Part shown: piece by piece, positions 3,098-62,398 of the stretch
How positions within the stretch are numbered: the stretch's first letter is position 1
How the letters are laid out: each line of letters begins with the position of its first letter
NCBI RefSeq assembly: GCF_001194135.2
Contig: NC_068998.1
Coordinates: 17,396,746 to 17,460,745 of the forward strand
Direction: 5' to 3'
From: Octopus bimaculoides
Lineage: Eukaryota
DNA: 64,000 bases
Made by a program: the position numbers and the translations under genes
The notes under the pieces: generated by a model
What the model was told of the DNA's origin: nothing
Databases searched by the model: none
Seen by the model: the letters and a program-made list of their open reading frames with translations, nothing else

Positions 3098-3309
3098 ATT
3101 CTTTTGTTTGTTTCAGTCATTTAACTGTGGCTATGCTGGAGCAATACCTTGAAGGGTTTTAGTCGAACAAATTGATCTTAGGACTTTTTTTTTTAAAGCC
3201 TAGTACTTATTCTATCAGTCTCTTATTCCAAATTGCTAAGTTATGGCGACATAAGCACATGAACACTAGCTGTCAAATCATGATTGGGGTGAAACTGACA
3301 AAAAGACAT

Positions 3310-3379
<70 letters not shown>

Positions 3380-3536
3380 ACATGAAGGGTCCTCTTTCAG
3401 TTTCCATCTACCAAATCCATTCACAAGGCTTTGGTTGGCCTGAGGTTATAAGCAGAAACACTTACCGAAGGTGCCACACAGTGGGATTGAACCCTAAACC
3501 ATGTGGTTGGGAAGCAAGTGTCTTACCACACCTGCA
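3098..3536 (-). mobile_element. Octopus-type tRNA-derived SINE, full length, with internal (CA)n
   Basis: The reverse complement gives the tRNA-like head gtgtggtaagacacttgcttcccaaccacatggtttagggttcaatcccact, a microsatellite middle, and the tail gatagaataagtactaggc...gctccagcatagccacag...tgactgaaac. It aligns by eye to the plus-strand copy at 12708-13097. Confidence 0.9.
3313..3377. repeat. (CA)n microsatellite
   Basis: Perfect CA run inside the SINE. Confidence 0.98.
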
Positions 3537-3686
3537 CTTATATGTTTATTAAATACAAGAATATTGAATCTAAATAGTCTTACTGTGCATGTCTCCACAG
3601 CGGTTATCACTCTTATCAGTTATAAGGCTGGGTGACAAAGCTGACGTAGTATGCTCCGGCTGCTACAGTTTTCCATTCTTCTAGAC

Positions 3687-9620: not shown

Positions 9621-10973
9621 AGATCTTATCAACCAACATTATCAAAATTAGTAGGTTCTAAACTCATTTTGCTTAATGTTATTAGCTGGTTATCGTTATC
9701 AAAAAGACTTTCATCTGAAAGTAACTACACTGTGAAAGAGTCAGTTGATAACACACCAACCTGTTAAATTCATTTGAATTTTAATTTTAACACTTCATGA
9801 AATTTAAAATGAATTTAACAGCTTTGTGTGGTATTAAATGGTTCATCCATGATTTAGATTCTTCAACATACCATCTCAGATCAAGTCACTTGCTAGATAA
9901 ATACATTCTTGAAGCTTTATTCCAAAGTGATCACAATAAGTGGTTTCCACTATTTATGCGCATGGGTGTAATATATATATAGCTTTATTTATTGTGAAGC
10001 CTTACATGCAAATAATATGGTCTATGAAAGCTGAAGTCCTGTAGTTATTGAACTGTAAACAAATTCGATTTGTTGGGTATGTTTCTTGAATTTGAAAGTC
10101 TGAATGAGTGCAACTGTCTGTCAGTTAGTATTGATCAGTATATACAAGAGACATAAGTATATTGATATAGTTAGATAAACTATATAAATGGATGCTATTC
10201 TCAGTTGGCAAAAGATGGCTGATTTAAAAGCAGCTTGTAGGCGAAAATCTTGGAGTGAAATAATTAGATCACATCTTAAGATAATAGATGTTATGAATTT
10301 GAAATAACTCATGAAAGTGTTGATTAGATTTGCAACTCAAACCAAAACTGTTTATGCAAGACAGAAAACATTACATGTTAAACTTATATTTTGTTATTGA
10401 AATGTTAATGAGAAGTTCCTTAGTGAATTTATTATTCTGAAATCTAAGGAAATTAAAAACATTTTGATTCTTTGTTTTATAAAATTTTTAAATGGATTTT
10501 AGCTGAAAATTAAAATATTTCTTTTTTCATGTCATATTTCATTAGAAGTTGTTTTTGAGTATTTCATTGGAAAGCATTTTTTAAAATTAAAATCTGGATT
10601 AATGCAAACCATCATATCTGCATAAAAAATTGTTAAGTCAGTGATTTTTGATTTTAAGAATTGTATCAGATTGTGTAGAAATATAAGCAGTCTTATTTGC
10701 TTAACTAATCAGGAGTTTTGAAATCGCTTGAAATTTAAGCATAAGGTTTAATGCAGTGTATTATTGAAGTATTTTATGTTTCAATGTTGTATTGATGTTG
10801 GAGTTTGATATTAGTTTATGTCTTGAGACCTCAAATTTCTCTAATATTCCATCACTTGTGCTTTTAGTTTTTTTATATAATTTATAATTTTTTAAATATT
10901 TGTTCTATAATTAATTACTATTGATAATCCTTTTCAGTTTTAGCATGTCATACTTATTTACAAGCTATATCTA

Positions 10974-12244
10974 TCAGGTCCTCCCATAAGTAATATCCGG
11001 ATTTTAAATAAGGTAAACAAGTGATCAAATCTTACATTTTAATGAAACTTAATTGTCAAATTGTTTCCCTGATTATCTGACATCTTTCCATCTTTCCATG
11101 TAAGCTTTTTAATCCCATCAGTGAAAAACTCTTTCGGTTTTGAAGAGAACTCTGAAAGGTCAGTTTCGACTTCCTCAGTTGTTTCAAGAGTTAATCCATC
11201 CATCTGTAAACTATGGAACAAATGGTAATTTGAAGGAGCAAAGTCTGGGGAATAAGGTGGATGAGCAATTTTCTCCCAGTTAAGTCCCTTGATCTTCTGT
11301 GACGTGATCTTTGCAGTGTAGAGTCTTGCATTGTCCTGATGAAACACTCCCTTTTGATTAACTAAAGCAGGTCTTTTTTCTTCAAAACAGTATTCAAATG
11401 CTCTAATTATTGACAGTAGATTTGAGTATTGATTGTTGCATTAGTTGGTAGCAGCTTAAAGTGGATGACTCCTTTGCAATCTCACTAAACAGAGAGAAGC
11501 ACCTTCTTCACATGGAGTTCCCTTTTTGGTTGTGGTTGGGCCTTGTCCCCTTCACCAAGCCAATGACTACAATGCTTAATATTCTGATAAAAGACCCATT
11601 TTTCGTCACCAGTCACCACTCTTCAAAAAGGATGAGATGAGTTCATGAGAACAAAGAGAACAACAAATGTTCACTCGGGATTTGCGGTTGGCTTCAGACA
11701 AATCATGAGGTACCCATTTTTCAAGTTTTGGGACCTTTCCAAGCTGTTGAAGATAGCAGTGAATAGTTGTGTGGCTTGAATGAAGCTTGCTTGCCAATTC
11801 TTCAACTGAAACTGCATGATATTTTTCAAATTCTGCCAAAAGGAACTTGTCATCAAACTCAATTGAACATCCTGTTTGGGCCTTGTCTTCAAGACTAAAA
11901 TCTCCACTTTTGAATTTTACAAACCATCTTCTGCAAGTTCTTTCATTCAGGCACTCTTCCTCATAGACTGAGTGAATATTTAGAGTTGCTTCAGCTACAA
12001 AGTTCCTTTTTTTAAACTCATAAAGCATTATGTGCTATCAAATGCTCCTTAGACACTTCCATGTTTGAAGAACTATAATTAGTGAAATTTCAATTAGATT
12101 ATCCTGCAAAATGAAATTTGATTAGTTTAAATATTTCCAAATGCATATAAATATTACTTGATGCCATTAGAAATTCCAAAATACTGTTAAAGCATTTACA
12201 AACTGAAAATATAGAATCCAGACATTACTTATGGGATGACCTGA
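10974..12244 (-). mobile_element. Near-full-length mariner (D,D34D) transposon with inactivated transposase
   Basis: TIRs tcaggtcctcccataagtaatatccggatt (from 10974) and the reverse complement of aatccagacattacttatgggatgacctga (to 12244). TA on the left, TG on the right. Transposase motifs MLYEFK, RWFVKFKSGDFSLED, WVPHDL, VTGDEKW, HQDNAR and HPPYSPDFAPSNYHLF are split over ORFs 11606-12028 and 11039-11347. Confidence 0.95.
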
Positions 12245-12707
12245 TGCATAAACATGTAACTTGTTTTGTTCAACATATGTGAAACAAACCTAGTTATTTG
12301 ATAAAATGTGATATGGATGACATACTATCATTGAGATTATTATGAATAGTATAGAAGAATGAGTAGTCAATTGGTTACATTAGTAATAAATAAAAGCATA
12401 TTTTTGAACTTGAATATCTATAATGTTTATATATTCTGCTAAGGGCTATAGGTTGATAGATAGAACAGTCATGCTAAAGAGTATTTTGTTGCATTTCTTT
12501 CTACACTGAATAAGCTGCCTTTGTATAGCCATGCCTTTCAACCTGATATATTGCAAAATTGTCAAAAGTTATAAAATTTTATTGATGACTTTATTCACAG
12601 AATAAAATTAAACATTATCTATTTTAACTGCTTGGTTTCTCTCGACATGGTGAGCCCAAATTCTCTATTTAATATCAACACATTTACTTGGAAAAAAAAA
12701 ACTGTAG

Positions 12708-13097
12708 GTATAGGTGTGGCTGTGTGGTAAGAAGCTTGCTTCCCAACCACATGGTTCCAGGTTCAGTTCCACTGCGTGACACCTTGGGCAAGTGTCTTCT
12801 ACTATAGCCTTGGGCCGACCAAAGCTTTGTGAGTGGATTTGGTGGGCAGAAACTGAAAGAAGCCTGTCATATATATATATATATATATATGTATATATTT
12901 GTATGTTTGTCTCTCCACCATCGCTTGGCAACTGTTGTTGGTGTGTTTACATCTCCATAACTTAGCAGTTTGGCAAAAGAGACCAATAGAATAAGTACCA
13001 GGCTTACAAAGAATAAGTCCAGAGGTTGATTTCTTTGACTAAAAGGTGATGCTCCAGCATGGCCACAGTCAAAATGATTGAAACAAGTAAAAGAATA
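12708..13097 (+). mobile_element. Octopus-type tRNA-derived SINE, full length
   Basis: Head gtgtggctgtgtggtaagaagcttgcttcccaaccacatggttccaggttcagttccactgcgtg, a (TA)n middle, and the tail gaccaatagaataagtaccaggcttacaaagaataag...gctccagcatggccacagtcaaaatgattgaaacaagtaaaaga. Confidence 0.92.
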
Positions 13098-13844
13098 CAA
13101 GAAAAGTGTCATCTTTAAAAAGTTGAAAAGTGCTCATATGATGTATTTTGGAGCATTTCAGTTAGGTAGAACCCACCAAGCTATTGTGTTAAGAAAATTT
13201 GAAGTCCATATGGCAAGCAAACGAAACATTAATTCTACCATGTTGCTGTTACTAGTTGTTCCCCTATGCAGTGTCTAATTATATAAACTGTAAATGGCAT
13301 TATATAAGAATTGGGAGTTTTAGTCATGAATACAATGAAGTTTTGGTGACTGGATATAAACTATCAAAATTTATCCTGATTGCCAGCTAAAATATCTACT
13401 CACCCCATTCAGATATGTTTTGTCTTTATAGGCTTTGACTGCATAGACCTTCTTTTTTTTTTAATCACAGTTTGAATGGGTTAATGAATTTGAATTACTT
13501 CACTAGAATTGCTTTACAACATACAATTTTATTGAAGAATCAAGGTTGAACATTTAGTGTTTGCAGATATTTAATTTTGATATACTTTTTGAAGTATTCC
13601 TAATATAAAGTCTTTTATTATAGTCTTGACTAATGTATTAGGCTTCTATTTTGTGTTGTGCATCATGGAGGTAATAGATTAAAAGATATTACAAGATAAC
13701 TTGAGTCCTATATAAGTTCAGTTTTCTCAAACAAGATTTATCAAGATATATTTTGTGTATGTATGTAAAATTACCTGTTCTTTAATACTTTTGATTAAAT
13801 GTTTAAAGTAGTGTTTTTTTTTTTTCATAAAGATTTGTAAAGAA

Positions 13845-13911
13845 TTTTTTCTTTCTATTCTAGGTAAGTGTAAAGAAAGATCTTTTATAAATTCAGCTTC
13901 TAAAGGTAATA
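13845..13911 (+). other. Candidate recursive splice site with 42-nt RS-exon
   Basis: ttttttctttctattctAG|GTAAGT at 13863/13864, and a second donor AAG|gtaata after 13905. Confidence 0.5.
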
Positions 13912-16408
13912 TTTGATTTTTCTATTCAAAACTATGATTTATTTTGAAATTAAATTTATCATTAGTTAATAACAGCCTATTTTTATATATATATATTTTA
14001 AGTCATACTTTCTGCTAAGGAGTGTAAAGTTAATAGAACAGTTATCTTAAAGTATTTAGTTTCAATTCTGTATGTTTTAAGTTTAAATCTTGTTAGAGTA
14101 GACCTTTCTTTCGACACTTAGGTGTTACTATAAAATTGTATTACAGTGGAGCTTATTCAATTTGCTGGGGGTCTTCTTTTCTCTCTTGTGTAAAAAAAAT
14201 TAAGTGGAGTTTTTTTATTAACCAAAATAGATTAAATGTAAGTTTAAAATTATTTTCATAATACTTCAGCTTATTGCTAACTGCTGAACCTGTTTATTAC
14301 TAAAGTTTTATTTTGAATCATTGGAAGTAGTATTTTATTGTTTAATAAACAATACAGAATAGAACAGTTATTTTGATTGTTTTGTATTTTCAGTCCCTCA
14401 TCTTTTGATAAGTTTAAGATTATATTCATCTTCAGATTATATCAATTTTCAGCTGTTATTTCACCTCAGGTCATCTCTGATTTGTTGTCAGGTCAGGATG
14501 GAAACCTGCCACTAGTAACCATGTAATTCAGTACTAGATATTCATTGTTGAATGGTTGGCAACTAAACTCAAGTACCCAGCATAATTAAAAAAGCAAAAC
14601 TTGTCAAAGGCAGATGAATTTCTTGAGAACCAACAACATTCATCTCTTGGGGAGGAGATAGATGGGTACTATGAGGATTATTTTGCTCAGCGAAATAATT
14701 GGATGAAATATTTAATTCTATACTGAACCAGTTAGGGCCAAGATTGATGATAGCCACATAAAACCTAAGAGGATGGAAAAGGGGTTGGTTGAAAATTTCA
14801 GGTATCCCAACAGCATTCCTGATTGAGCAGATCTATGATTAAAGGCTCCATATCTTGAACCATCTTGATCCTTTTTCTGTTTAGGACTTTACTGTCTGAT
14901 GTATCCTTCTTCAAGATGTCAGTATTTGATTTCAGGGATATTTCAGTTCCTGTCATTGACCTTTTTGGCAGTGTTGTTATGTAAGTAATACACAATTCAA
15001 AATATCTTGTTTTTGTGTGATGGGAGGTTTTACAACACTTGATAAGATTTGAAATGATTATTAGTGGTTAAAAACCACTCTACTAGGAAGTTGTTAATTC
15101 AGTATACAATCTTAACATAAAATTATTGAGGGATTCAACCATTCCTCTAAAAGAATAATGAATTTACCAGAAAAATATTGGGCTGGAATTTGCTGAAGAA
15201 TATTGTTAAATGTTTATTATTTGCAGGATGAAATTTACCAAAATGCAGATGATTTATAGAGCTTTAGATGCACAACAAACCTAGAGCAAAGATTGACTTT
15301 TATCAAGTTGCAGTCTATCTAAGTAGAATTAGATGATATTGACAGTAGAGAAGTGTTAAAAGAAATACAATGAAGTTTTGGTTTTTGTCAAGATGCAACT
15401 CCACCGTCAGTTATATTTTCTTGAAGAACAGACAGTTTTACTTTGTTGATTTACAAAACACTTTTGATAGGCTTCTAATTTCTGCAATCTAGTCATAATG
15501 GAGATAACTAGGTATGGAAAAGAGCTATCTTGTAGGGAAACCATAATCTATACACAAGTAAATCATGATCAGCAGGAATGTGCAAGACATTTTAAGAGTT
15601 CACTAACTCTCAGATAAATCTCTAGAAGTTTTTTCTCTCCTTAAAGCTGTTCTTGTAAAAAATAGGATTGTGAACCATAAAAATACTGTGTAGAAATGAT
15701 CTAAGAAAGAATTTTATTTTATCTATACCTTTTAATACAGGTTTTACTCAATTTGTAAGAGTTACATCCTATTGAATAGCTCACAATAGTATCTGTATTT
15801 TATTGAGCCTGGAGAAATGGAAAACAAAATTTAATTGCAGAAGCAATTTTAGCTGGAATTAATGCAGTACCAAACTAAATAATGTAAAATGTGTCCAAAG
15901 AGGAATATCATTTAAGGAATCTTGGATAGTAAATATATTTATAAATCTCTTTATACTGGACAGTTCTAACAAGTATTTTAGTGATTTTTACTAACCATTT
16001 TAAACTCACAGGAAGAGTTGAGTTGTTATTGTTTAGCCTCGAAATAGACTTTGGTTGAGCATGTCTATGATCAAAAGCATTCTGGGTATGACTCTCCCAA
16101 ATTTTTCAGGTCTAATATACCTTAAATAGCACTATTCAGTTTGTCCTTTCTTAAGATGTTAGGAAATAATTTAAGTGCAATTTGATTGTTTTTTCTAGTC
16201 AATTAAGCAACCACATTGTTGCTCCCTTGTTTAGGAGTTGAGTGATTTAATCAGTAGAATAAAGTTTTATAAACTTGTTGACCTTTAAGCACACTGCATT
16301 TTCTCTAGAATTGTTTCCCCTGTCACTGCCCTGTTACTACAGAGGAGAAAACTCATACAGTAACACGATGCACCTACAGTGTGCTAAAGGTTAAACCTAA
16401 AATTACAA

Positions 16409-17677: not shown

Positions 17678-17944
17678 TGGCAATAGTGAACACCTAAGAA
17701 TACTGTAGACTTTTTGAGAAGTGAATTGTTGAAGTTTAGCTTCAGTGGTTAAAATAAGTAGATTTTTATTCTGATGCATTAATTCAAAATGTGTTTGGCT
17801 GATTAGTTAAGGTATTTTTTGTCTTCTATTTTGTAATTTTAAAAGAATTCATTTTGAATTTAAGTTTTATTCCATTCTTTTGGAACACTACTTTATTTCC
17901 AAGTTCAATTTTAAGCTCTTGTTCTCATTCTTGCTGTCATTTTT

Positions 17945-18710
17945 CTCCTGTATCTGTCTTATTTTCTCTCTCACTCTCTCCTTTCCTCCTCTCTCTCACT
18001 ATCCCTCCTTTCCCTCCTCTCTCCCTTTCCCTCCTTTCCTCCTCTCTCCCTTTCTCTCCTTTCCTCCCCCTCTCTTTCTCTACTTTCCTCCTCTCTCTTT
18101 CTCTCCTCTCCTTTCCTCCTCTCTCTTTCTCTCCTCTCCTTTCCTCCTCTCCTTTCCTCCTCTCTTTTTCTCTCCTTTCCTTCTCCCTCCTTTCCTCCTC
18201 CCTCCTTTCCGTCTCCCTCCTTTCTTTCTCCTCTTCCTCCTCTCCTCCATCATCTCCCCTTCCTCTCCCTCTTCTTTCCTTTCTCTCCACACCTTTCTCG
18301 CTTTCTCCATGCCTCTCTCTCTCTCTCTCTCTCCATGCCTCTCTCTCTCTCTCTCTCTCTCTCCATGCCTCTCTCTCTCTCCATGCCTCTCTCTCTCTCC
18401 ATGCCTCTCTCTTTCTCCATGCCTCTCTCTCTCTCTCCATACCTTTCTCTCTCTCCATGCCTGTTTCTCTCTCTCTCTCTCTCTACTCCTTTCTCTTTTC
18501 CATCATTCTCTCCTTTTTCAACTTTCTCTTTTCCTCTTTCTCTCCTTTCTCTTTCTCCTCTTTCTCTCTTTTTCCCCTCTCTCTCTTTTTCCACTATCTC
18601 TTTCCACCTTTCCTTCCCTTTCTTCTCTCTTCCTCTTTCTCTCTCATCCTCTTTTTTCCTTCTCCCCCTCTCCTTCCTTTATATGCTTTCTTTCTGTTCT
18701 TCCCTCTCCG
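17945..18710. repeat. About 760-bp homopyrimidine/homopurine low-complexity tract with an internal CCATGCC(TC)n minisatellite
   Basis: The plus strand is almost only C and T. About 8 CCATRCC units separated by (CT)n runs lie at 18307-18461. Confidence 0.95.
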
Positions 18711-19654
18711 CATGAAATATTATTCTCTTTTCAGCTTATTTGTATGGCAAATGAATTTCTTACCTTGATACTTAAAGTTAGTACTCAGTAACTTTCTCCT
18801 TATTTTTTTCAAAGAACAAACAAAGAAACATAAATAATCCACCTGCAAGTTCAATTTGAAACCATTTTATGTTTTGAACACTTCATTAAGTAAATTAAAA
18901 TAATGCATAATTGAAGGTTGTTTATAGGAGAGTTTTTAAATTTCCTTTTCTCTCCTGTTAAACATTACCAAGCCATTTGCATTATATTTCATTTTAATTA
19001 AGACTGAGATTTAAAAAAAAAAGTATATTTCTCATCCCAATTAACTATTTTCTTCATAACTTTTTATCTTTCAGTAAATGTCTAAGAATTTAAATTATTG
19101 ATCATGGTCTTTTACACAACATGAAACTTTGTATTTCTAAGGTAGATTAAAATGTAATTTTTCTTAGGATATTAAGTGAAATAGGTCTTGGTTCTTTATA
19201 GCTATGTACTGGATTTAGTTCATTGAAAAATTATGCATCATTACCTGTAGAATTAATTAGAATTGATAAAAGGATTTTAATGTAGACTTTTGGGGAAAGT
19301 AGAATTTTTGTTTTTTTTAAATGACATGGTTTTTAACAATTAATCCTTTATAATTTCTTGGGTAGGAGGTTGGGCAGTCCCATTAGAATTTTTCAGGTCT
19401 AAGATAAGTTAAATCGGTAAAAAAAGTCAATATTTTTCTTTAGCTTCTTTCATTGCAAAACTAAAAATGGAACATTTATCATTGTCAATTTTCTTCCGAA
19501 TAAAATATAATGCTGTCTGAAAATTTGTTGTCTTTTTGTATTAAATGACCCTCAAGAATTTTTGTGATTTGGTGTTAAACTTTTACATATGTGGATAGGA
19601 TATGAATTTAGATATTAATATATTGCACAAGTCAATGTTATTGAAGTTACAGAT

Positions 19655-22800: not shown

Positions 22801-24810
22801 TTGTTTTGCAGACAGTCTGTTGCCTGCTTTGACATCACTGCCACCTGCTTTTAGGTGTCTTTAATAAAGTATATTCTGCTGCCATCTTTCAGAATATCTC
22901 CAATTTAAGGATACCTTCTTTCTATCTCCCATCAATCTCACAGGCTTCATAATGTGTTATTGGCACTGCCTTTCCTCCCAGTAAAAAAGATTAAAAAAAA
23001 ACATTTACAACCTAAATAACTGGTGCCAAACATACACCACCTTCCATATACAGAAGAGACCTTGAAAACTTCATTCAGGAAATGCTAATCTAGTTTCCTT
23101 CAACAACACCATGATGCAATCATTTCACAATTCAAAGAAGCAATGTTACAGTACCATGCATTCTGCACTCTTGAACAGTACACAGTTAAATATTCACTGT
23201 GATTATAAATGGTAAGCTTTAAAATCTCCAGTCACATATCTGTAACATTGTGAAAACAGTATCCCAAAAGTTCAGACTCTTCAAGGCCATAAAATGCTTC
23301 AGCCTTTATCTTTCACCAAGTATCTACAAAGAGCAAATGCTAACCATATTAGAGTACTATTTACATATTTAATATGCTGCTATTTGTGCACAGACAAGTA
23401 TATTAGGCTACATTAAAAAAAAAAACAATAATACCAAAGGCTTTTATGTAGTCCACAAATGCTCTTTCTTCTTGCTATCTCTTTTACGATTACTATAGTG
23501 GCTTCTGCACACTGCCTCTAACAAAGTACTCCCAGTGCATAACCCTCTTCTCTCTTTGACATCTCTACTCTGTGTTTCTCCTTAAATTCTGCACTGAACA
23601 TTATGTTACTCAGAATTTCAGATGTCTGGAACACCTTTCTTGCACATAATTTCCCCACATTAATATAGGCAACCCAAAAACCGCTCACTAATTTGAGAGT
23701 GTCTGCAAAGGTCATGAGTTCTAACTCGATGACGATGATGGTAATAATAATAATAAAACTTTACAAAGATTGGTACTTACCATAATAGTTAGTATTTGTT
23801 ATTTCCTTTGCCACTTGTTGCAAAAGCCATTCAGTGATTACAAATTTTCTGCTTTTGCAGCACAGGGAGAAGCAGACAGAACTAGGCACAGAAGGTGACT
23901 GCCATTATTACTACCAGCACCAGCACCAGCACCACTATTTAGAAATAAAAATGTCAATGATTTTAGCATTTTATTTGTTTTTTGTTTAAAATAGAAAGAT
24001 AGTTTGTTAGGTTATTTTTTAAAACTTAACTATAATAGTTGTATTTTTCATACTGATATAAAGAAAAATTTTGGAATTTGGTATTGATCCAAGAACAAAT
24101 ATGGTTTTTGAAACTTTTAAGTATTAGAAATGATAAGAACTATAGTATATAAAAATCTTAATTCTAAAGTTTGATCCCTTTTATATTTTCCATTTTTCTT
24201 ATTTCTTTTCTTATTACACATTCTTTTCTCTTTCCTTTTATAGATCATATGGCTTTTTGTGAGAGTAGTTGTTTTTATCTGAATGCTAACTAATCAAGTG
24301 TAAAAAAGAAGTGGTACTGTCACTTAGGCAAACTGGAACAAACAAAGGTAAGGGAAGACAAATGTTTTTAGTTGGAGTTATGAACTCTTTTTCAACAGGA
24401 AGTTTAAAAACATTTGTCTCCCCTTACACACACTTCCTGTTTTGACAGCACACTTCCTGCTTAACACAAACTTTTAACTCCTTTTTTTTAAACCTAACAC
24501 AACTCTCAATTCTCATGCATCCTTATTTTTCCAATCATTATATACATGAATTACCATTGAACTTCAAAAGCTCAAAGACAATATAATGTATTGGTATATT
24601 TATTTTTTTATATATTATTTTCTTTATTTTTGTACTTCTTTGTAAAAAACATTTTCATTCTCCCTCTTCTTGAAAATTTGCTTCGCAATGAAAGCCGGTT
24701 AGAGAAATCTTTATTAAAATATGCTTCCAGTTTAGCATTCTGCCTTATTCTTATTTTTCATTTTCCTATTATTTCTCCGTGTGGTTAACACAACCCCACT
24801 ATTTACTGAC

Positions 24811-24846
<36 letters not shown>

Positions 24847-25058
24847 TTGTGTGTCTGTGTTTGTCCCCCCACCATCGCTTGACAACCGATGGTGGTGTGT
24901 TTACGTCCCCGTAACTTAGTGGTTCGGCTAAAGAGACCGATAGAATAAGTACTACACTTTCAAAGAATAAGCCCTGGGGTCGATTTGCTCGACTAAAGGT
25001 GGTGCTCCAGCATGGCCGCAGTCAAATGACTGAAACAAGTAAAAGAGTTAAAGAGTAA
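24811..25058 (+). mobile_element. 3' half of the Octopus-type SINE (head missing), apparently young
   Basis: Starts at (TA)n(TG)n and keeps many CpGs (accatcgcttgacaaccgatgg, ttacgtccccgtaac, ggtcgatttgctcgactaaagg) that have decayed in the 12708 copy. Confidence 0.92.
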
Positions 25059-27039
25059 ATGTATTTGATTAAAATTATGGTTATGCAAGAGTTAAATATA
25101 TATTATTACTTTACAAGAAACACAAACATCCTTGTACTTTTTATATACTACATATAACTAAAAGCATTGCACCTTTGATCTACTTAGGTTTATTAATATC
25201 TGTTGACCTCATGGAGACACCATGCTTTTATGTTACATAAAAGGCTTCTAAAGGGTTCCTAGATATTTCATCCTTGAAGTGATGTTAACCTTTTAACAAA
25301 GCACATATATGTCCTGCTCTTAAAAAATGCTTTACATATCTGGGATATATTTACTCATCTCTAGGAAAATGAAACTAGTAAATTATGAATACTACTCTGG
25401 TACATTAAAAAAAAACCCGACTATTCTGATACAGGCCTAATGTAACCATTTCTAATGCCTTTTGGAAAGCCCACATACTCAACATAGTTAAAAGTGCTTG
25501 AATGATACTTGTTTTCTTGTATTGTTGAGATGTTACTCATTACTAAACTTATATTAGATCTAGATTGTTTTTGCTCAAGAGTATGCCTATTATATTTGGA
25601 AAATGGCACATTTTTGTTTTAAAATCTATTCATGGAAAACTATTTAATCAATAGTTTCTGATGGGTTGAGTCTCTACCAATGTAATGCAGTTGAGGTAAA
25701 TGCTTACATTTGAAATAACACAGTACTTGAAAATATTTGAAGTTAGACATTTTTCATGAGGTTTTTTATTTTTATTTTTTTTCATATCAAAAACATCTTA
25801 TAGAGAAATTTCCAGCATTTAGAACTAAGCTTTTTAAATCTGGAAAAACATTTAAATAAATATATAAATAAATAAATATAATTAAGAGCTGATACAGAAA
25901 GCTTTCATTCTTATTACGAAATTGCAAAATATACGCTCATTGCCTGTGTGTTGAATGGCAATAAGGCTTCATGTATACAGCTGCAAAATAATTGTTTCAT
26001 ATTAGTGGTGATGGTGAGGAATAAAAATGTGGCAATGTTGGGTTCTCTTTCATTTGAAAAATAATTTTTTTTCATATACTTCCTAGTGTCATAAATATTG
26101 TATAAAGGATAGCTGGTTGATAAGTGCAAACATTTTGTGCTAATAATTATCTATGGTAATGGGATAAACAAAGCTTGGAAATATTAATAATAGGAATCTC
26201 CGGTGGCACACAACTTTCAAAGAAAGATTATTGATTATTTTTAGCTAATTTTTAAGGCTTATTACCTTAGGATAAGCCATAATCTAGCTCTTTCGTTTAA
26301 GAGCTAGGATGCTGCTAGTTGTTTTAACAACTGTTATTCTACATAAGAGTTCAGAATTCTTGCATACCAGTTTTAATTGACCAATCATTATTTTAGAAAC
26401 ATTACTTGGCAATCTGTTGAGATGGGGAATTTAATTATTCCTTTGACTGAGAAATACAGTTTGAATGCCAATCCTAAGAGGCTTTTTTTTATGATTGCAT
26501 TCTTCCCAGTCACTCTTTCTTACTCCTTTCTATTGTCTTCATACTCTTTCCTTGCAATGGTGGTGCAACTGGAACTGCTGTATATCAGTGCATGGTTCAT
26601 AGAAGGTCATGTTGTTAATGATGATGAACAACAAGATCAAATTGTTTAGCCAATGATGTAATTACATCATCCTCTTAAGCCAGTTTGACCCTTTGAAATG
26701 TGACATGACTACTTGAAAAATCTTTTTAGTTGAAATTAAATTATGATTGATTATTGATTGAAACATAGTGTCTTCACAACAGATTCACTGAAGAGATACG
26801 TTTAAGCTAAAATTCATATTTAAAACAAAGTTTATTGATTTAAGTTTTCTTTAAGTATTTTCTTCTTAACCAATTGATGTAACTAAACAGTTTTGAAATA
26901 GTTTTAAATTTAAACACTTGCGTAATTTTCCTGCTTTTGTTTTTTTCTTAATTCGACAAATGTTTGAAATAAAAGAATTAAAATAATTGAATATTAGTGG
27001 TTTTGGTTAGAATTCTAGAGCTATATTACAAGAACTATC

Positions 27040-27045
27040 TTTCTT

Positions 27046-27091
<46 letters not shown>

Positions 27092-27176
27092 TCTCTCTCT
27101 GTTTGTCTCTCTCTCTCTCTCTCTCTCTGTTTGTCTCTCTCTCTCTCTCTCTCTCTGTTTGTCTCTCTCTCTCTCC
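27040..27176. repeat. Compound (CT)n microsatellite with periodic GTTTGT interruptions
   Basis: CT runs are interrupted by repeated gtttgt units. Confidence 0.95.
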
Positions 27177-28554: not shown

Positions 28555-28611
28555 AACACACACATTAGGGGAAACTGAAGGTACAATTCCTCACAGTGAC
28601 TGACTAACTCT

Positions 28612-28830
28612 ATCTTACCAGATCCCCTCACCACCATCCACACCGCCCTTGCCAGAGCATGTTCCATGGACCGTGCATCTGCTCTCTCTCCCCGCACCCG
28701 CCCTGCTATCACCTGTCTCCCGTTTCTCCTCACCTACCACCCCACCACCCTACCTCTCCAACGCACCATTCTCTGAGCCTTCTGGCGATTCCAGTCCGAC
28801 CCCTCCACTTTGCACATCTTTCCTAACCAA
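28612..28830 (+). mobile_element. Penelope-like retroelement fragment (RT to GIY-YIG linker)
   Basis: A GC-rich island translating PDPLTTIHTALARACSMDRASALSPRTRPAITCLPFLLTYHPTTLPLQRTIL*AFWRFQSDPSTLHIFP. This matches the PLE pattern (GY)P...I..A..RA....R..AL.......PL.LTYHP......I......LQ.DP.T..IF. Confidence 0.75.
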
Positions 28831-30107
28831 CATTATGCAATGTTTTGTTATTTTCAAGACAGTGTGTGTGATTTAACAAAGATTTAACTACTATCTCTAG
28901 CAGGTCAAGTACAAAGGCTTCTTGTTTGGTTTCTCCTCAGAATCTGTTATCTTTAAATATAGGTTACATTTGCTGTTTTATTATTTTATCCTACATTCTG
29001 CCTCATTCAGTGACATTTCATATCAACCCTAACCAAGTGTAGTGATATTCTTTGCTTAGGATAGTGTGTCAGAAAAAGACATATACAAGAGAAATGCTTT
29101 GTTGCCAATTGTAATTAAAAAATTTTTTTTACTTCATTAACATAACATTAACATAATTTGAGTCTTGTAAAACCTATTTAATTAATATTATAGTTAACTT
29201 CCAATATACAAATACTTTTTCTATTATGTCCTTAGCCCTTTTCATGCATAATTTTTATTTATTTGACATTGGAATTGGTAGAAATCTAAACAAAATAGGA
29301 TATTATGAATTTTTTTGTACCTTATGACTTGCTTTCCATATTTTAATATTTGTTCATGTTTTTAATTACCGTTTAAAATATTTTATTCTATGTTTTTCAA
29401 TTTCTGCTCTATAGTTGTAAAAATATTTGTTTATATTCATATGTTAATTTATCTGAGCTGTTCATTATCTTAGATCAATGTTTTCTTATTGTACATTGGT
29501 TGTTCAGTGTATTTATCAGCTTATTAAGTTATATTATGCCAAGTAATATCAGTCTTTTTCTATAACTTAAGCTTCATTACTTATTGATCACATTTGTTGA
29601 TTTACTTCACTGTACAATACTGCACAATAGAAAGGAAGGGATTATTCTTACATTTTGTTCTAGTTCTCAGATTTTTTTTCACCAAGAAATTCTATTTTTG
29701 GACTATTTTTCCAATTCTTCTGAGATGATCTACCAATACATTTCTGTGCACATGATAAAGGATGCATTGTGATGTTTTTTTCATTTGTCTTAATTTGAAA
29801 TTATTGTTGACAGTTTTACCAATATCATAAGAGAGGTTTCACATAGCAATCATAATATACAGTATTAATACATTTTTCTTTGTTTATTCATATATCATTT
29901 ACAATTTTCTGATATTTGAAATAAATGAATTTCCATTTCCCTTATGTAAGGAGTTTATTTGATAAAAGTAAAAAAAAAAAAAAAACTCCAAAAGAAAATC
30001 CTACTTGACTTTCAGAGGAAAAAAATTAGCTTGATTGTTTTTCATAACTACAGAAAAATAATGAAAAAAAATTGTATGATTTTTTTCAATAATTCACATG
30101 AATTTAA

Positions 30108-30550
30108 TGGGTTAAGATGTTTGCTTTCCAACCACATGCTTCTTTGAGTTCAATCCTACTGCTTGGCACCTTGGGAAAGTGTCTTCTAGTCTACCCTGGG
30201 CTGACTAAAGCCTTGTGAATAGATTTGGAGATGGAAACTGAAAGAAACCCATTGTATATGTATGTATATGCCTACATACATAAATACACACATAAATCCA
30301 TACATACATACATGTATGCACATGAATGTCTGGTTGTGTCTGCTTGACATTGCGTGATAGTTGTAAAATGAGTGTCACTCTCAAAGAAGCAGTGTCACTC
30401 ATTTCCAATAATCTGTGAAAACACATGGCCATGACAAAATGTTACCTTACTTGGAACCAGGTAAGGGTTGGCTGTAGAAAATCTACCTCTTTAAACTCTA
30501 TCCAGTCCTTGCAAGCATGGAAAAATGGACATTAAAATGATGACAATGAT
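30108..30550 (+). mobile_element. SINE with the same tRNA-derived head but an RTE-LINE-type 3' tail
   Basis: The head matches the 12708 SINE (ccaaccacatg..ggcaccttggg..aagtgtcttct..ggaaactgaaagaa). The 3' end, gctgtagaaaatc..ccagtccttgcaagcatggaaaaatggacattaaaatgatg, is like the RTE tails. Confidence 0.8.
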
Positions 30551-31599
30551 ATTTAGTTCATTTTAAATTGGTCTTCTCTCTCCAGTGATTTTTTTTTTCT
30601 GTAGATAATTCTCATCTAATTCTTGCAGACTTTTGCCATTGTAACTATATACTTAACTATGTGTGCTATACTGATATCTTTACACTAATTACTATTAGTA
30701 GCCTTTGTGGTCCATTCTATTAAAAACAAATGTATGAGCTGTAAAGCTGTTACTTAATGAGTACCATTTGTAAACTCCACTTCAAAGTCACGATCAGTAT
30801 ACTTTGTAATTTATGCTATACAACTTGTTTATTTCCTTTTTCTCTTAAGTGAATTAGGTTGTTGGCAACATGTCATAGAAATCTTAATTAATAAAACCTT
30901 GGAATTTGCTACATTAAATATTAATTCTTCAGTCCTCTCTTGTGCTTAAATCTTTTTCTTCCATTAATTCTGCTTTGGGAATTAGGAAATTTATACTGAC
31001 AGACTTAGAATCTTTTGTAACTATGCTTTTAACTATAGAAATGCCAACTAGTGCACAAGTTAACTGACCATCCATTCACTCAAACGTAAAATTACTGTCT
31101 TATTTTGATATATCATTCACAGACAATAGCATGATTTCTATTGTTTTGTCATATCTAAGATATGATTATATTTCTCTGTTTTTACATTTTTTTTTTTTGT
31201 ATTCTTGGTGAAAATTGATCAAGTAACAAATGAAACGCCTTGATTTTCTTATTATTACTACTCTTTATGTTTAAAACCCATCAGTCAACTTCAGAGGTTA
31301 ATAAAATAGAGTACAAGTCATGTACATGAGTCAATATAATTATTTATACATTACCCTCAACATTTCTGGTCCTGTTAAAATAATTTCAGTTTCAAAATTT
31401 TTCCATTAAGTCTCTTTGAATGTTTATTATTTTTTGTGAGAAAATAAATACCCTGCTCCCTTAGAATTCATGTGTATTCTGAGAACAAGCTAACATAACT
31501 CATTCCAATTCAGGAGAATGATTGCTTGACTGTTAATCACAAATTCCATCACTTAGCTAAACCAGAACCTGTCACCATATATTGCTTGCACACTTTTTA

Positions 31600-31980
31600 C
31601 ATCTTCGCTTGGCTTTGCAAGCAAGGATTTGTGGAGGAGGATGTTCATGTCTGTGGCAATCTTGCTGGTGCCCAATGAGTCCAATTCAGGACAAACCAGT
31701 ACAACTGCAGAGACTGCATGGGAAGGTAGGCTGATCAGGGCTGGCTACAGTATCCTTGTTTTCCCTCCTTTTTCTCTTGTCTGCAAGGATGGTCCTGTGG
31801 GTGTCTTCAAAGAAGGCTGTTTCCCAGTGGACAATAAGTCACCAGGCTTCACAGTCAGCAGTAAGAACAGAACTCTGGTGATGATCAATATTGCAGGCAC
31901 CCAGAGAGTTCTTGTACCTCTTCTTTGGTGCCCCTCTATCATTTTTCACACAGTATATTGTTGCACTATTATAATTAAGA
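31600..31980 (-). mobile_element. RTE-clade LINE 3' end encoding a C-terminal C2H2-like finger
   Basis: Translation DRGAPKKRYKNSLGACNIDHHQ..LTADCEAW, then FEDTHRTILADKRKRRENKDTVASPDQPTFPCSLCSCTGLS*IGLIGHQQDC. The 3' UTR is acaaatccttgcttgcaaagccaagcgaag. Confidence 0.85.
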
Positions 31981-32784
31981 TGGCAATAGAAAGGATATCC
32001 ACTCATAGTAAACATATGAAAATGAAATGTGTGAGAGATGTGGATTCTGCCTGTTGTGGTAGAAGGAACTCTTGCAAGGAACATCTCAAGTACCAGAGGC
32101 ATGATAAAATGCTAAATAAACAGCTGATTGGTTAGTTTTCTCTATTGCAAGATGATGCACATGACTGCTCGTCCAACCCATGTCACAGTTGAAAAACAGG
32201 TAAAAATTAATGTCTACTTCCTCTCTAGAAATAGGAATAAATGATTTATTAAGTTCACTTTTCATTAATGGTTTGTACTTGATAATACATTGGCTGATTG
32301 GGTGTTAACTGAAGATAAAGAACTTTCAACTGATATTAATAGTTGGAGCTAAGGTTATTTAATAATATGCTGTGTCAAAACTTCAGATCTTTTGACTTGA
32401 GTTAGGTGTAAATATATTCACTGTAAAAGAAAGGAGAAAAAATGTTAGCACTGCGTTTCTCAACTAGCATGTGCAAAACTAAAGAGAAATAGGTACTTAT
32501 GGTACCCTACAGGCTGATTAGATTTACAAAACTAATCTATTATAATTGTTATTTAAAAAAAGAAACAAGTTTTTTTAAAAGTTCTAAAAGATTTGAAAAC
32601 TGATGTTTTACTTCTGAAGTAGAAGTAGGGAGAAAGAAAATTGATTTTATTATATGAACAATGTAACATATAGATTATATGATATATAATACTGATAATA
32701 TTTAAAGGCCTGAAATTTGGAGAAGGATAGTTGATTACATTGGCTCCAGTATTTAACTGATACTTCTTTTTTATTGACCTTGGA

Positions 32785-36462: not shown

Positions 36463-37664
36463 TTGGGCCATCCCATAAATAATGCAGTTTTTTAATACTA
36501 ATTTTATTTTTCAAAATTAAGGTAAACAAAGTTCCGTTTTAATTTAAAATATACTCTCCTTCATCTCTACAATGCTCTTCCATCTATCTGGTAGACTTGC
36601 AAAGCCCTTCTTCCAAAATTCACTTGTCCATGATGAAAAATACTCCTTCAGTACTGTTCTGACCTCTCTACAGAATTCATATTTTTTCCATCCAAATGAT
36701 TTTGAAGACTGTGGAAGAAATGATAATCAGATGGGGGCAATATCTGGTAAATATGCTGGGTAGGGCATTGTTTCCCATTGAAACTGTCATCCTCACTGTA
36801 TGTGGCCAACCATTATCCTGATGGAAGAACACCTTTCGTCTTGAAACCAAAAATGGTCATTTTTCTTTTAGTGCTGACTTCAGCTATTCAAGCTGTTCGC
36901 AGTAGATCTCCTTTGTTATCTGTTGGAAGTTCGAAGTGGACTAAACCTTTCATATCCCACCAAACAGATAACATCTTATATGGGTGAAGACCTTCTTTAA
37001 TCTGGAGTACCAGTGTTTCTCCTTTCCCTGCCCACTGTCTTCGGCACTTGCCATTTTTATAGAGAACCCATTTCTCATCACCAGTCACTATTAGGTCCAA
37101 AAACTGTTCATTTATATGACGTGACAGCAAAGAAGAGCACCCATTGACCCAATTTGCTGACTTTTCTAATGGCACGCAAGTGTCGATGAATGGTTGAATG
37201 ACTAAATCCAAGCTTTTCTGCTAGTTCCTGAACAGTTACAATGAAATTTTGTTCCACCAGGGTTTGCAAGATGTCCTTGTTGAGCTTTACAGGTCTTCCA
37301 AGATGAGGCATTTTTTCTAGGCTGTAGTTCCGGCTTGGAATTTTTGGAACCACCATTGATACTGGCTTATGCTTATTGTCTGATCCCCATATACTGCATT
37401 AATATTCCTCGCACTTCCCATTGTGTTGTTGCCTTTATTGAACTTATAAAGCAAAATATGCCGAATATGCTCCTTTGTCACTTCCATTATAGCTTTGGAA
37501 AACTAACTGTTAAAATCGAACTGCATTCTTCAAAACTTGCACTAAGGGCAAGGTAAAATTACTACCTGCTTTTATAGCACATTGATGCAGATAGTTTACC
37601 CTGTCCCCCTCTGACTTTTAGTTCATGCAATTGAAAAAACTGCATTATTTATGGAATGACCCAA
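36463..37664 (-). mobile_element. Near-full-length mariner (D,D34D) transposon with inactivated transposase
   Basis: 31-bp TIRs with 2 mismatches: ttgggccatcccataaataatgcagtttttt and aaaaaactgcattatttatggaatgacccaa. TA is intact on both sides (36461-36462, 37665-37666). Motifs GRPVKLNKD, ELAEKLGFSHSTIHRHL, IVTGDEKWVLY and LSVWWDMKG are present, with frameshifts. Confidence 0.95.
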
Positions 37665-53290: not shown

Positions 53291-53454
53291 GTCATGATCA
53301 TCCTATCTCTTTTTTTTTCTTTTTGTATATTTGCAATTGCTCAGAATATCCTTTTAGTTGATAGGTTGTGATTTGAGGGAGATTTGGCTGCTATTGTAAG
53401 ATATTTTGTTGAACACTAACACCAACTGGTAGGGGGGGGAGGACTCTTTCACTG

Positions 53455-53526
53455 TGAATTTCATTTCTTCACAGGTAACCTGTATAAGAAGGAGTGTGCA
53501 GTATCAATTACTTAAGGACGGTGAGA
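53455..53526 (+). other. Candidate recursive splice site with 46-nt RS-exon
   Basis: ttcatttcttcacAG|GTAACC at 53474/53475, and a second donor ACG|gtgaga after 53520. Confidence 0.35.
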
Positions 53527-56500
53527 GAGGAACGGCTTGACAGGTTTCAGTTGCATATATTGATATTACATGAACTTCAAAAGATATTAAGCTAGTGTTT
53601 GGAACATGACTTAAAAGGTTCTTATATAAAACTATGATAAGACTAGAGAAGGTATCAGGCAAGTTAGTACTAGAAGGGTGAAACTCATGTTAGCACGGAA
53701 TGGTATTGAAAAATCTTTTATACTACAAAGGAAACCTTAATAAGCACATTCTACAAAAAAAAAAAAAAGAAACAAAACTGAAACAAAAAAGAAAAACCTA
53801 GACAACAGCTGTTCTGTTTCAAAGTGTTAAACTACATGAAACAATTTAGTTATCTCAAACTAGGTGTCATGAATTCTAACAGCTTGTACAAGTTTGCTGA
53901 ATTCACTTTTAATGAGTGTAAAATGTAACAAAAGCCATATAATAGAAGTTGCTTGAATTTAATAGTTGGCTATTTTGTTCTGTTTCATAATCAACATTTA
54001 CGTTTTTAAACTTTATTTCTTTATCAATTAGATATCCTTCTTTTATACCATATATATTTTTTTTTTTATAATTCTAGATTTGCTAAATTAAAGCAATTGA
54101 ATTTATTTTATCCTAAAGATTTAATCTTTTCCCAGAGATTAAAGATTCTTTTTATTAAGTTCTTTTCTTTAAAACATGTAAGTTATTAAATATCAAAGAT
54201 TGATTTTTTTAAACTCATTTACAATATGTTATGAAAAATGTATTTCTCTTGGAGTCATTTATATTAGTCAAATCATTTGCAGCTGTGTTCTATTGCGTTT
54301 TAATAAATTATGTTCCTATCGATGATTTAGTATATAAATTCTTTGAAATTTGTTATTAACTTTAACTCAGAAAACAGCTCTTTTGGTTAGACACAAAGCT
54401 AGTTTATGTAGGAGATAGGTAGTTGATCATAAACCAGTTCTAATATCACAAGTTATTTTATATTATTGGGTTGCCTTCAGTAGGATTTGAACCAACAACA
54501 GAAATGTACTTTGGTACTAATTTTAGCCTTTATTTCAGCATATTACGTCTTCCTCTCCCTCTGCCACTTGTAGAAAGTAAACTTTAAGAATATTCATTGA
54601 TTAATAGTTTTAGTTGTGGTTTAGAGCAAATATTATCTTTAATTTTGAAAGTTTAACAAGTAGTAAATTATATTAAACTAAATTAAGATATTTACTCAAA
54701 TCATCTAATTAATTACAAATTTGCTGCTTTTGACATAATTTCATGTTTTTTCATTCAAATTCCTTCATTCAAATGCATCCTTCATAGTAACAATTATCTG
54801 TAATTGTCTTCAATTAATCCTCTTCCTAGCTTTACAGTCTTTTTTCTTTTGATTATTTGCAATCTACCTAAGAAGTTTTAGTCTTTATAGTTTACAATTC
54901 TTCTCATGCCCTTTATCTGTTATTGATCATATTTATACAATTAAGAAATAACAGTGCATATAATCTGGATATTGAAAATTTTAATTTTTTTTTCCCTTCT
55001 TGCAAATTTCAACATGTACTTCATGAGTCACTAATACTGAATGCTAAATTGTATAACATAATAACTTTAGAAGATACCATTTCTGCATATAAGAAAGTCT
55101 TAAAAGTAAATATTCATATATTTACCTACATACCTTTACCTTTGTTGAATTTTAATAATGTCTTTTATTTTTGGTTTCATACTAAGTAAAATGAACTTTC
55201 CTTTCAGTATTTTAAAAATGGTTTATTTCCATTTTTAACATCAAAGGGTTTAAATTTGGTGATTAAGAAACATTTAAAGGTTAGCTAACATTATTCTTTG
55301 GTTAAGTATACAAAGAAGAAAAGTCAATGTTTCTGACTTACTAGTCATCATCAGTAGAAATGTAACATATTGTTATTATTTATTGGCACTGTAGCACCTA
55401 GCTTCATATATAAAGAATGTTCATAATAAATACTGAAATGTGTTGGGAAACAAGCATAATGTATAATTTAATTATAAAAGGACATTGACCACATACTGAA
55501 TTAAATTATCCATTAAGTTCATTATTTTTGTTGCTCATGTACATGGAAGATCAAATTTGTTGATTTATCATTTTTAAGCATTTGTAGATCATTGCAGAAC
55601 AAGAAATTTCAGCAACTATATGAAAATATATATGGTGTAGGTATATGATGAAGTTTGCTTTGCAGTTATTTATTTCACGGTATTGAGCCGACTGTGGTAC
55701 TTTGAAGAAGTGTTTCAGCCATAGCCGTGGGTTGACCTAAACCTTATAAGTGAAATTAGAGAAAATTATGTTGAAGTCCATTGGATGAAGTGTACCTATT
55801 CTTGAATGGTAGACTTATTGCATTTCTTGGTTTAACATCATAACTTGTTTCTTGGGTGCCTGTTTCAAGTATTTGGGCCAGGTCCTACTCACCTGGCACA
55901 TAGGACCTTAGGATAACCTAGGTGTTGTAAGTTTTCCATTCTTTCCTCCAACAACCTTGAAGACCATACAAAGTGTCATGCTTGCTGACTTACCTCTGAC
56001 TAAAATATTAAAAGATATTGACAATTATTGCATAATTCTTTTCTGTATAACCCATAAGTAGTTGTCATATTCTTGCCCTTATTTATGTTTTCTTTTTTTT
56101 TTTTTTTTGAATTTATTCTTTACCAACTATTTTCATATTGTGGTAACTGAAGTAATTACGAAAAGTGTAAATGGTTGTAGATTGTAATCACTTATTTTAG
56201 TAGTCAGAAAGAAAAAAAAAAGAGTTGACTTTAACAAATTTTTATGTTAAATACTCAGTAATGTTAGTATATGCTTTAATGGTTTTTTGAAGATAGATAT
56301 TTCACTGAATTGTTTTTGGTTTTTTCATATATTGTGACACATGTTAAATTAACAGTTCATATAAAATTTATATCTGTAAATATATCTGTAAACCTATTTT
56401 ACTATTTTACTTTATATCTCTTTCATACTATTCCTCAATGCATGTACAACATTATCAACATTTCTAGTAAACATTTATGTAACTGTATTTCTATTGAAAT

Positions 56501-57267: not shown

Positions 57268-57326
57268 NNNNNNNNNNNNNNNNNNNNNNNNNNNNNNNNN
57301 NNNNNNNNNNNNNNNNNNNNNNNNNN
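57268..57326. other. Assembly gap whose flanks overlap by about 42 bp
   Basis: agttttcacagagtgtggtaatacacacgttcattgtattag occurs on both sides of the Ns. Confidence 0.95.
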
Positions 57327-62340: not shown

Positions 62341-62398
62341 CTTTATTTTTTTTTTGCAGGTGAGTAATTTTTACACCAACTGAAGCAAAAAGGTAACT
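62341..62398 (+). other. Candidate recursive splice site with 33-nt RS-exon
   Basis: ctttattttttttttgcAG|GTGAGT at 62359/62360, and a second donor AAG|gtaact after 62392. The exon has stops in all three frames. Confidence 0.55.

What the first reader, a model, noticed from the sequence alone, without database searches (positions are those of the whole stretch)
13845..13911. RS-site-like motif 1: PPT-TAG|GTAAGT with a 42-nt exon
Seen: a perfect GTAAGT directly follows a strong acceptor, and a second donor AAG|gtaata follows 13905. Frames 0 and 2 contain stops. Phase 1 is open and frame-preserving (xKCKERSFINSASK), so this could instead be a rarely included alternative exon that competes with recursive use.
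Basis: partly seen in the sequence, partly recalled or inferred. Interest (0 to 1): 0.7.

Follow-up and report, generated by a model that had tools for sequence, protein, structure and literature searches.

The report
Candidate recursive splice site, octopus DNA

Summary
One frame is open (KCKERSFINSASK).

The window is AT-rich (30% GC), repeat-laden draft sequence of an octopus. No protein-coding exon was detected on either strand.

AGGTAAGT alone is not enriched: 1 on +, 2 on -, about 1 expected. The combination is unusual. Of three AG|GTRAGT on the + strand, two (13864 and 62360) have pyrimidine tracts in the top 0.4-1.1% of all YAGs (Fisher p about 0.001). None of four on the - strand does, and neither of two in 169 kb of other octopus DNA. 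Each strong site also has one weaker donor 42 or 33 nt downstream (chance about 0.16 or less each). That matches the "ratchet point plus short cryptic RS-exon" layout described in Drosophila. Neither site lies in a detectable repeat.

Missing evidence: host gene and strand, conservation, and any RNA data. Site 1 also has a short AG-free zone with no consensus branch point.

Verdict: a plausible but unproven recursive splice site (about 45%). Chance is the main rival (about 35%). If real, it is a new member of a known kind, in a clade where recursive splicing has not been reported.

The parts
13812..13828 (+). T14 run followed by TTCAT, the only YTNAY branch-point-like pentamer within 60 nt upstream of the acceptor (A at 13827, 36 nt from the AG)
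   Evidence: Two AG dinucleotides (13831-32, 13841-42) lie between it and the acceptor.
13845..13861 (+). Polypyrimidine tract ttttttctttctattct: 16 of these 17 bases are pyrimidines, and the scored interval -18..-3 (13846-13861) has 15 of 16
   Evidence: top 0.36% of all YAG sites on this strand
13862..13863 (+). Acceptor AG (TAG)
   Evidence: 3'ss log-odds 11.7 with my own approximate PWM.
13864..13869 (+). GTAAGT: the putative regenerated (ratchet-point) 5' splice site, perfect U1 consensus
   Evidence: 5'ss score 10.5
13864..13905 (+). 42-nt putative cryptic RS-exon. Open only at offset 2 (KCKERSFINSASK).
13906..13911 (+). GTAATA: weaker downstream donor (AAG|GTAATA), the putative RS-exon 5' splice site
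   Evidence: score 5.4. It is the only donor scoring 3 or more within 15-120 nt.
62342..62359 (+). Site 2: tttattttttttttgcAG, a polypyrimidine tract and acceptor. TTTAT branch-like pentamer (A at 62345); no AG between it and the acceptor.
   Evidence: (14/16 pyrimidines, top 1.1%)
62360..62392 (+). Site 2: GTGAGT ratchet donor (62360-65) starting a 33-nt putative RS-exon with stop codons in all three frames
   Evidence: (combined score 27.1, best in the window on either strand)
62393..62398 (+). Site 2: downstream donor AAG|GTAACT
   Evidence: score 7.9, against 13.8 for the ratchet donor

Best explanation
13862-13911 is a candidate recursive splice site (ratchet point) in a very long intron or long non-coding stretch of a + strand transcript in an octopus genome.

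Proposed mechanism, all steps inferred:
1. The spliceosome first defines the 42-nt cryptic RS-exon (13864-13905), using the strong acceptor ttttttctttctattctAG and the modest downstream donor AAG|GTAATA.
2. The upstream exon is spliced to 13864. This removes the first part of the intron and puts GTAAGT directly behind that exon, which regenerates a strong 5' splice site.
3. That regenerated donor out-competes the weaker GTAATA donor. The 42 nt and the next intron segment are removed together, and nothing is left in the mRNA.
4. A second site of the same build at 62360 (CAG|GTGAGT, then 33 nt, then AAG|GTAACT) would be the next stepping stone, 48.5 kb further on.

Shown here: the sequence anatomy, its rarity, its strand bias, the non-repeat context, and the absence of detectable coding exons in the window. 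Inferred: transcription of the + strand, any use of these sites, and the skipping of the RS-exon.
For: - Exact juxtaposed 3'ss|5'ss with a perfect GTAAGT.
- Pyrimidine tract in the top 0.36% (site 1) and 1.1% (site 2) of + strand YAGs. With the third + strand AG|GTRAGT (rank 0.54), my hand calculation from the ranks gives Fisher p about 0.0015. The PWM-based ranks give p = 0.0013.
- The - strand has four AG|GTRAGT sites and none has a tract (p = 0.19). 168.6 kb (strand-bases) of other octopus DNA has two, also without a tract.
- Expected sites at least as good in both scores: 0.05-0.11 per strand. Observed: 2 on + and 0 on -.
- Both strong sites have a single downstream donor, at 42 and 33 nt. 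P = 0.16 for a donor as good as site 1's within 20-80 nt; site 2's donor is stronger, so its probability is lower.
- Both downstream donors are weaker than the ratchet donors (5.4 against 10.5; 7.9 against 13.8).
- This is the published architecture: ratchet point, cryptic RS-exon of about 50 nt, weaker downstream donor, exon content usually not coding (PMC8605326). Recursive sites occur in most fly introns longer than 40 kb (PMC6110457).
- Site 2's 33 nt has stops in every frame.
- The two sites are not homologous to each other. Neither matched a repeat in the window or in the other octopus loci then held.
- No coding exon was detected in 64 kb on either strand, which is compatible with one long intron.
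Against: - There is no RNA evidence, no orthologous sequence, and no host gene or transcription direction. The window may be intergenic.
- The core octamer is at chance frequency. About 0.01 sites of the full architecture are expected per 62-kb strand, which still implies thousands of chance copies genome-wide.
- My score thresholds were set by the candidates themselves, and the PWMs are approximate, written from memory rather than trained on octopus.
- Site 1 has AGs at 13831-32 and 13841-42. Its AG-free zone upstream of the acceptor is therefore only about 20 nt, with no consensus branch point inside it. The only YTNAY (A at 13827) lies upstream of those AGs.
- The T>A skew of the + strand (-0.07) could not be validated as a marker of the sense strand in octopus.
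- Recursive splicing has not been reported in cephalopods in the searchable literature.
Confidence: 0.45

Rival explanations
1. Chance. In T-rich, 30% GC non-coding DNA, a pyrimidine run happens to precede an AGGTAAGT, and a mediocre GT lies nearby. Nothing is spliced here.
For: - AGGTAAGT occurs 1x on + and 2x on -, about as expected.
- The combined score of site 1 (22.2) is only slightly above the best - strand sites (21.0 and 20.1).
- Markov order-5 simulations give 0.54 sites per strand with a combined score of at least 22.2.
- A donor scoring at least 5.4 occurs every 0.4 kb.
- The branch-point region of site 1 is poor.
- No gene context was found.
Against: - Two of the three + strand AG|GTRAGT have top-1% pyrimidine tracts, against none of six elsewhere.
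- Both also carry a short-range downstream donor.
- The joint in-window probability is of the order of 1e-3 (my own Fisher combination of the values).
Confidence: 0.35
2. An ordinary rarely used cassette, poison or decoy exon of 42 nt (13864-13905). It would be spliced in conventionally and either included in frame (xKCKERSFINSASK) or would act as a decoy, without recursive use of the GTAAGT.
For: - Strong acceptor plus a donor 42 nt away, and a length divisible by 3 with one open frame.
- Expressed RS-exons exist in flies and are common in mammals (PMC8605326; PMC6224609, abstract).
Against: - An open frame is expected by chance in 78% of 42-mers.
- The peptide gave no match when included in the candidate-exon search, though 13 residues are too short to be detected.
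- The exon-start GTAAGT is a much better donor than GTAATA, so after splicing to 13864 it should win.
- The sister site at 62360 cannot code, with stops in all frames.
Confidence: 0.12
3. The motif belongs to a transposable element or other repeat that happens to carry splice-like signals, for example the antisense A-rich tail of a retroposon.
For: - The window is full of SINE and mariner relics.
- On the - strand, the T14 run at 13812-25 reads as an A-run.
Against: 1-kb segments around both sites have no significant match elsewhere in the window, to each other, or to the 49 kb of other octopus loci then held.
Confidence: 0.05

Closest known systems
Drosophila intronic ratchet points with cryptic RS-exons (Ubx, kuz, Bx; Burnette 2005, Duff 2015, Joseph 2018/2021, Pai 2018)
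   Same: - (Y)n-YAG|GTRAGT juxtaposition.
- A short cryptic exon (about 50 nt in flies; 42 and 33 nt here) ending in a weaker donor.
- Exon content mostly non-coding.
- Tens of kb between sites in very long introns (PMC8605326; PMC6110457).
   Different: - The host is an octopus (Lophotrochozoa), where recursive splicing has not been reported.
- The 'ultraconservation' and RNA signatures that define the fly sites are untested here.
- Site 1 uses TAG rather than the usual CAG and has a short AG-free zone.
Vertebrate recursive splice sites / RS-exons in long neuronal genes (Sibley 2015; Blazquez 2018)
   Same: - RS starts by defining an RS-exon.
- Splicing then creates a recursive 5' splice site that competes with the RS-exon donor (PMC6224609 abstract).
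   Different: - Only nine fully suppressed intronic sites were noted definitively in mammals (PMC8605326).
- Whether this octopus locus lies in a long neuronal gene is unknown.
Poison, decoy and pseudo-exons in long introns
   Same: A short intronic segment flanked by usable splice sites that is normally absent from mRNA.
   Different: Those do not need a consensus donor placed exactly at the acceptor. Here GTAAGT / GTGAGT starts at the first exon base at both sites.

Membership tests
Recursive splice site (ratchet point with cryptic RS-exon) | [quoted passage not shown] | tested here: met
   ttttttctttctattctAG|GTAAGT, 15/16 pyrimidines, top 0.36% of YAGs
Recursive splice site (ratchet point with cryptic RS-exon) | Short downstream cryptic exon (about 50 nt) closed by a 5' splice site | tested here: met
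   42 nt, then AAG|GTAATA. P = 0.16 by chance within 20-80 nt.
Recursive splice site (ratchet point with cryptic RS-exon) | Ratchet-point donor stronger than the RS-exon donor | tested here: met
   10.5 against 5.4 bits with my own approximate PWM. This is partly built in, because the site was picked for a strong GTAAGT.
Recursive splice site (ratchet point with cryptic RS-exon) | Lies in the sense strand of a long intron of an expressed gene | tested here: inconclusive
   - No coding exon was detectable in 64 kb on either strand, so a long intron is possible but intergenic DNA is not excluded.
- The T>A skew of -0.07 is uncalibrated.
- No annotation of the source assembly was reachable.
Recursive splice site (ratchet point with cryptic RS-exon) | Usable branch point in an AG-free zone upstream of the acceptor | tested here: inconclusive
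   the AG-free zone is only about 20 nt (13843-13861), and the only YTNAY (A at 13827) lies upstream of two AGs. Site 2 passes (TTTAT, A at 62345, no intervening AG).
Recursive splice site (ratchet point with cryptic RS-exon) | Strong evolutionary conservation of the SA|SD core, and of the downstream donor, relative to the flanks | not testable with these tools
   - No eukaryotic genome DNA search is available.
- ORF-based fishing for orthologous DNA found nothing.
- The metagenome scans found nothing.
Recursive splice site (ratchet point with cryptic RS-exon) | RNA signatures: junction reads from the upstream exon into the site, a sawtooth in nascent or total RNA, and segment lariats | not testable with these tools
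   No RNA-seq access.
Alternative in-frame cassette micro-exon | Frame-preserving length, an open frame, and presence in some annotated or observed protein isoform | tested here: inconclusive
   - 42 nt, with one open frame, but 78% of random 42-mers have one.
- No protein match; a 13-residue match could not reach significance.

The most novel reading that the evidence does not exclude
Octopus long introns are removed stepwise by fly-type zero-nucleotide recursive splicing. The ratchet points at 13864 and 62360 would be two consecutive stepping stones, each defined through a 33-42-nt cryptic RS-exon. That would be the first evidence of recursive splicing in a lophotrochozoan. It would suggest that the mechanism is ancestral to bilaterians and scales with the intron expansion of cephalopod genomes.
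Probability: 0.4. Interest if true: 0.5.

Novelty: new member of a known kind. Interest (0 to 1): 0.35.

Why it matters
Recursive splicing has been demonstrated in Drosophila and vertebrates. Both cited papers discuss only those two lineages, and the literature search found nothing for cephalopods. Cephalopods have very large, repeat-rich genomes with long introns in neural genes.

If fly-type ratchet points are used there, three things would follow:
- The mechanism would extend to a third major bilaterian lineage.
- The exon-definition (RS-exon) model would be supported as general.
- Octopus genome annotation would gain a simple sequence signature for marking the sense strand of long introns.

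If the site is chance, it shows how easily an AT-rich genome produces convincing splice-like motifs.

Tried and rejected
- Rfam on the whole window: no family.
- Pfam scan of all 346 stop-to-stop ORFs of at least 45 aa: only Mos1/mariner domains, no host exon.
- Look-up of the mariner ORF as a called gene: not on record.
- Homologue search with eight concatenated ORFs from 13078-16105, meant to fish orthologous DNA from other assemblies: nothing.
- Homologue search with 100 splice-flanked ORF candidates from both strands (3378 aa), meant to find any annotated exon and hence the host gene: nothing.
- Exact-match scans of metagenome contigs for both sites: nothing.
- Test for repeat or TE origin of both sites: negative.
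- Using AT/GC skew and AATAAA asymmetry to infer the transcribed strand. The asymmetry is fully explained by base composition, and the skew could not be calibrated on the two small octopus genes available, so I give it little weight.
- Limulus as the source organism was rejected. Only the mariner matches the Limulus locus, whereas the window's SINE family is present in several copies in the O. bimaculoides and O. sinensis loci.

Full report
**Observation.** The sequence reads ...aagaattttttctttctattctAG|GTAAGTgtaaagaaagatcttttataaattcagcttctaaAG|GTAATAtttg.
- The acceptor AG is at 13862-63 and GTAAGT at 13864-69.
- The interval 13864-13905 is 42 nt, and GTAATA follows at 13906-11.
- Offsets 0 and 1 contain stops. 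Offset 2 reads KCKERSFINSASK.
The open frame carries little weight, because 78% of random 42-mers of this strand have one.

**What the window is.** It has 30% GC, five N gaps of variable size and many microsatellites.
- There are two Mos1/mariner relics on the - strand (about 10969-12245, with ORFs at 11042-12034; and 36547-37502). There are also several copies of a SINE-like repeat.
- The closest mariner proteins come from Limulus and from Octopus bimaculoides, O. vulgaris and O. sinensis.
- The SINE family occurs in several copies in the fetched O. bimaculoides and O. sinensis loci and not in the Limulus locus. The source is therefore an octopus. The assembly style fits the O. bimaculoides scaffolds, but I could not fix the species.
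- No Rfam family matched.
- No Pfam domain other than mariner was found in 346 ORFs of at least 45 aa.
- None of 100 splice-flanked ORF candidates from either strand has a homologue among 5.8 billion proteins, a set that includes annotated proteins of O. bimaculoides, O. sinensis and O. vulgaris.
- No protein-coding exon was therefore detected in the 64 kb: it is either a long intron or intergenic.

**Is the motif more than chance?** The bare octamer is not: 1 on +, 2 on -, about 1 expected.
- I scored 3' and 5' splice sites with approximate PWMs written from memory. They were used only to rank sites against nulls.
- The candidate's combined score (22.2) is second on the + strand, behind 62360 (27.1). 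It is just above the best - strand sites (21.0 and 20.1).
- Sites that equal the candidate in both scores are expected 0.05-0.11 times per strand (Markov order 1-5; empirical product 0.06). Two are observed on + and none on -.
- A threshold-free test asks how the pyrimidine tracts of the AG|GTRAGT occurrences rank among all AGs or YAGs of the same strand. On + the ranks are 0.009, 0.004 and 0.50 by PWM (Fisher p = 0.0013).
- By plain pyrimidine count the + strand ranks are 0.0036, 0.011 and 0.54, which I combine by hand to p of about 0.0015.
- On - none of the four occurrences is strong (p = 0.19).
- In 168.6 kb of strand-bases from other octopus loci there are two AG|GTRAGT, and neither has a tract.

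**The second layer of the architecture.** Each of the two strong + strand sites has exactly one plausible donor close downstream.
- Site 1 has AAG|GTAATA at 42 nt. Site 2 has AAG|GTAACT at 33 nt.
- The empirical probability of a donor as good as site 1's within 20-80 nt of an AG is 0.16. Site 2's donor is stronger, so its probability is lower.
- The three + strand and - strand AG|GTRAGT sites that lack even a mediocre donor, and the three others, have none within 80 nt.
- Both downstream donors are weaker than the donors at the junction.
- The 33-nt segment of site 2 has stops in all three frames.
- Combining the tract test (doubled for two strands) with the donor test by hand gives an in-window probability of the order of 1e-3.
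- This is suggestive rather than proof. The thresholds and the 20-80 nt range were fixed after seeing the data, and a genome of gigabase size would hold thousands of chance copies.

**Other checks.**
- The two sites share no homology. Neither matched a repeat in the window or in the 49 kb of other octopus DNA then held.
- Branch points: site 2 has TTTAT (A at 62345) with no intervening AG.
- Site 1 has its only YTNAY (TTCAT, A at 13827) upstream of two AGs (13831-32 and 13841-42). Its AG-free zone is therefore only about 20 nt and lacks a consensus branch point. This is a real weakness of the flagged site.
- The + strand has T>A (AT skew -0.07). The AATAAA deficit (82 against 132) follows from that composition.
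- The skew could not be validated as a sense-strand marker in octopus.

**Comparison with what is known.**
- Joseph et al. 2021 (PMC8605326) define the fly ratchet point as a tandem acceptor|donor. It embraces a short cryptic RS-exon of about 50 nt with a downstream donor.
- In that paper the ratchet donor usually wins by competition. [quoted passage not shown]
- Pai et al. 2018 (PMC6110457) find recursive sites in most fly introns longer than 40 kb.
- Blazquez et al. 2018 (PMC6224609, abstract) describe the same RS-exon-first logic in mammals.
- The present site meets the three sequence-level criteria: juxtaposition, a short exon with a donor, and donor hierarchy.
- Location in a sense-strand long intron and branch-point quality are inconclusive. 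Conservation and RNA signatures could not be tested.
- No paper in the searchable library links recursive splicing to cephalopods or octopus.

**Verdict.**
- The best-supported reading is a genuine but unproven ratchet point, one of two on this strand (about 0.45).
- Pure chance is the main rival (about 0.35).
- A conventional rare or poison cassette exon is third (about 0.12), and a repeat-derived motif is unlikely (about 0.05).
- If real, it is a new member of a known kind in a new clade, which is of moderate interest.
- The decisive data are the position of the window in the annotated assembly, total or nascent RNA-seq junctions with a sawtooth, and cross-octopod conservation. All are easy to obtain outside this tool set.

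Noticed in passing
window 62342-62398 (+): A second and stronger recursive-site-like motif: tttattttttttttgcAG|GTGAGT, then a 33-nt segment with stops in all frames, then AAG|GTAACT. It has the best combined splice score in the window on either strand and lies 48.5 kb downstream of the flagged site.
   Followed up: yes
window 53453-53530 (+): A weaker AG|GT junction (catttcttcacAG|GTAACC) followed 46 nt later by a stronger donor (score 9.9). Offset 0 of the 46 nt is open. It could be a cryptic or real short exon rather than a ratchet point.
   Followed up: partly
window 10969-12245 (-), L003 9783-11075, L001 2817-4111: The mariner (Mos1-type) relic is 79% identical at the DNA level over 1.3 kb to a copy in the horseshoe crab Limulus polyphemus. 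It is 85% identical to a copy in Octopus bimaculoides. This closely similar mariner lineage is shared across phyla, which would fit horizontal transfer.
   Followed up: partly
window 56884-57326 and 58349-58789: A near-identical (96-98%) direct repeat of about 0.44 kb, spaced 1.46 kb apart, with both copies abutting N gaps. It is either a tandem duplication or a scaffolding artefact.
   Followed up: no
window 17900-18720 (+): An 0.8-kb almost pure polypyrimidine (TC-rich) tract on the + strand, built of degenerate 18-72-nt periodic units. A shorter (TC)n lies at 27038-27175.
   Followed up: no
window 28600-28810 and 31557-32132: Two GC-rich islands in otherwise 30% GC DNA. One is a C-rich segment (up to 63% GC) next to (TA)n/(TG)n. 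The other is a 576-nt stretch with long open frames on both strands. Neither has a Pfam or protein homologue. They may be decayed TE fragments.
   Followed up: partly
window 3158-3550 (+), 12668-13100 (-), 24735-25060 (-), 30100-30441 (-): Several copies of an octopus SINE-like repeat carrying an internal microsatellite (CA/TA). The same family is present in the O. bimaculoides and O. sinensis loci and served here to identify the source clade.
   Followed up: yes
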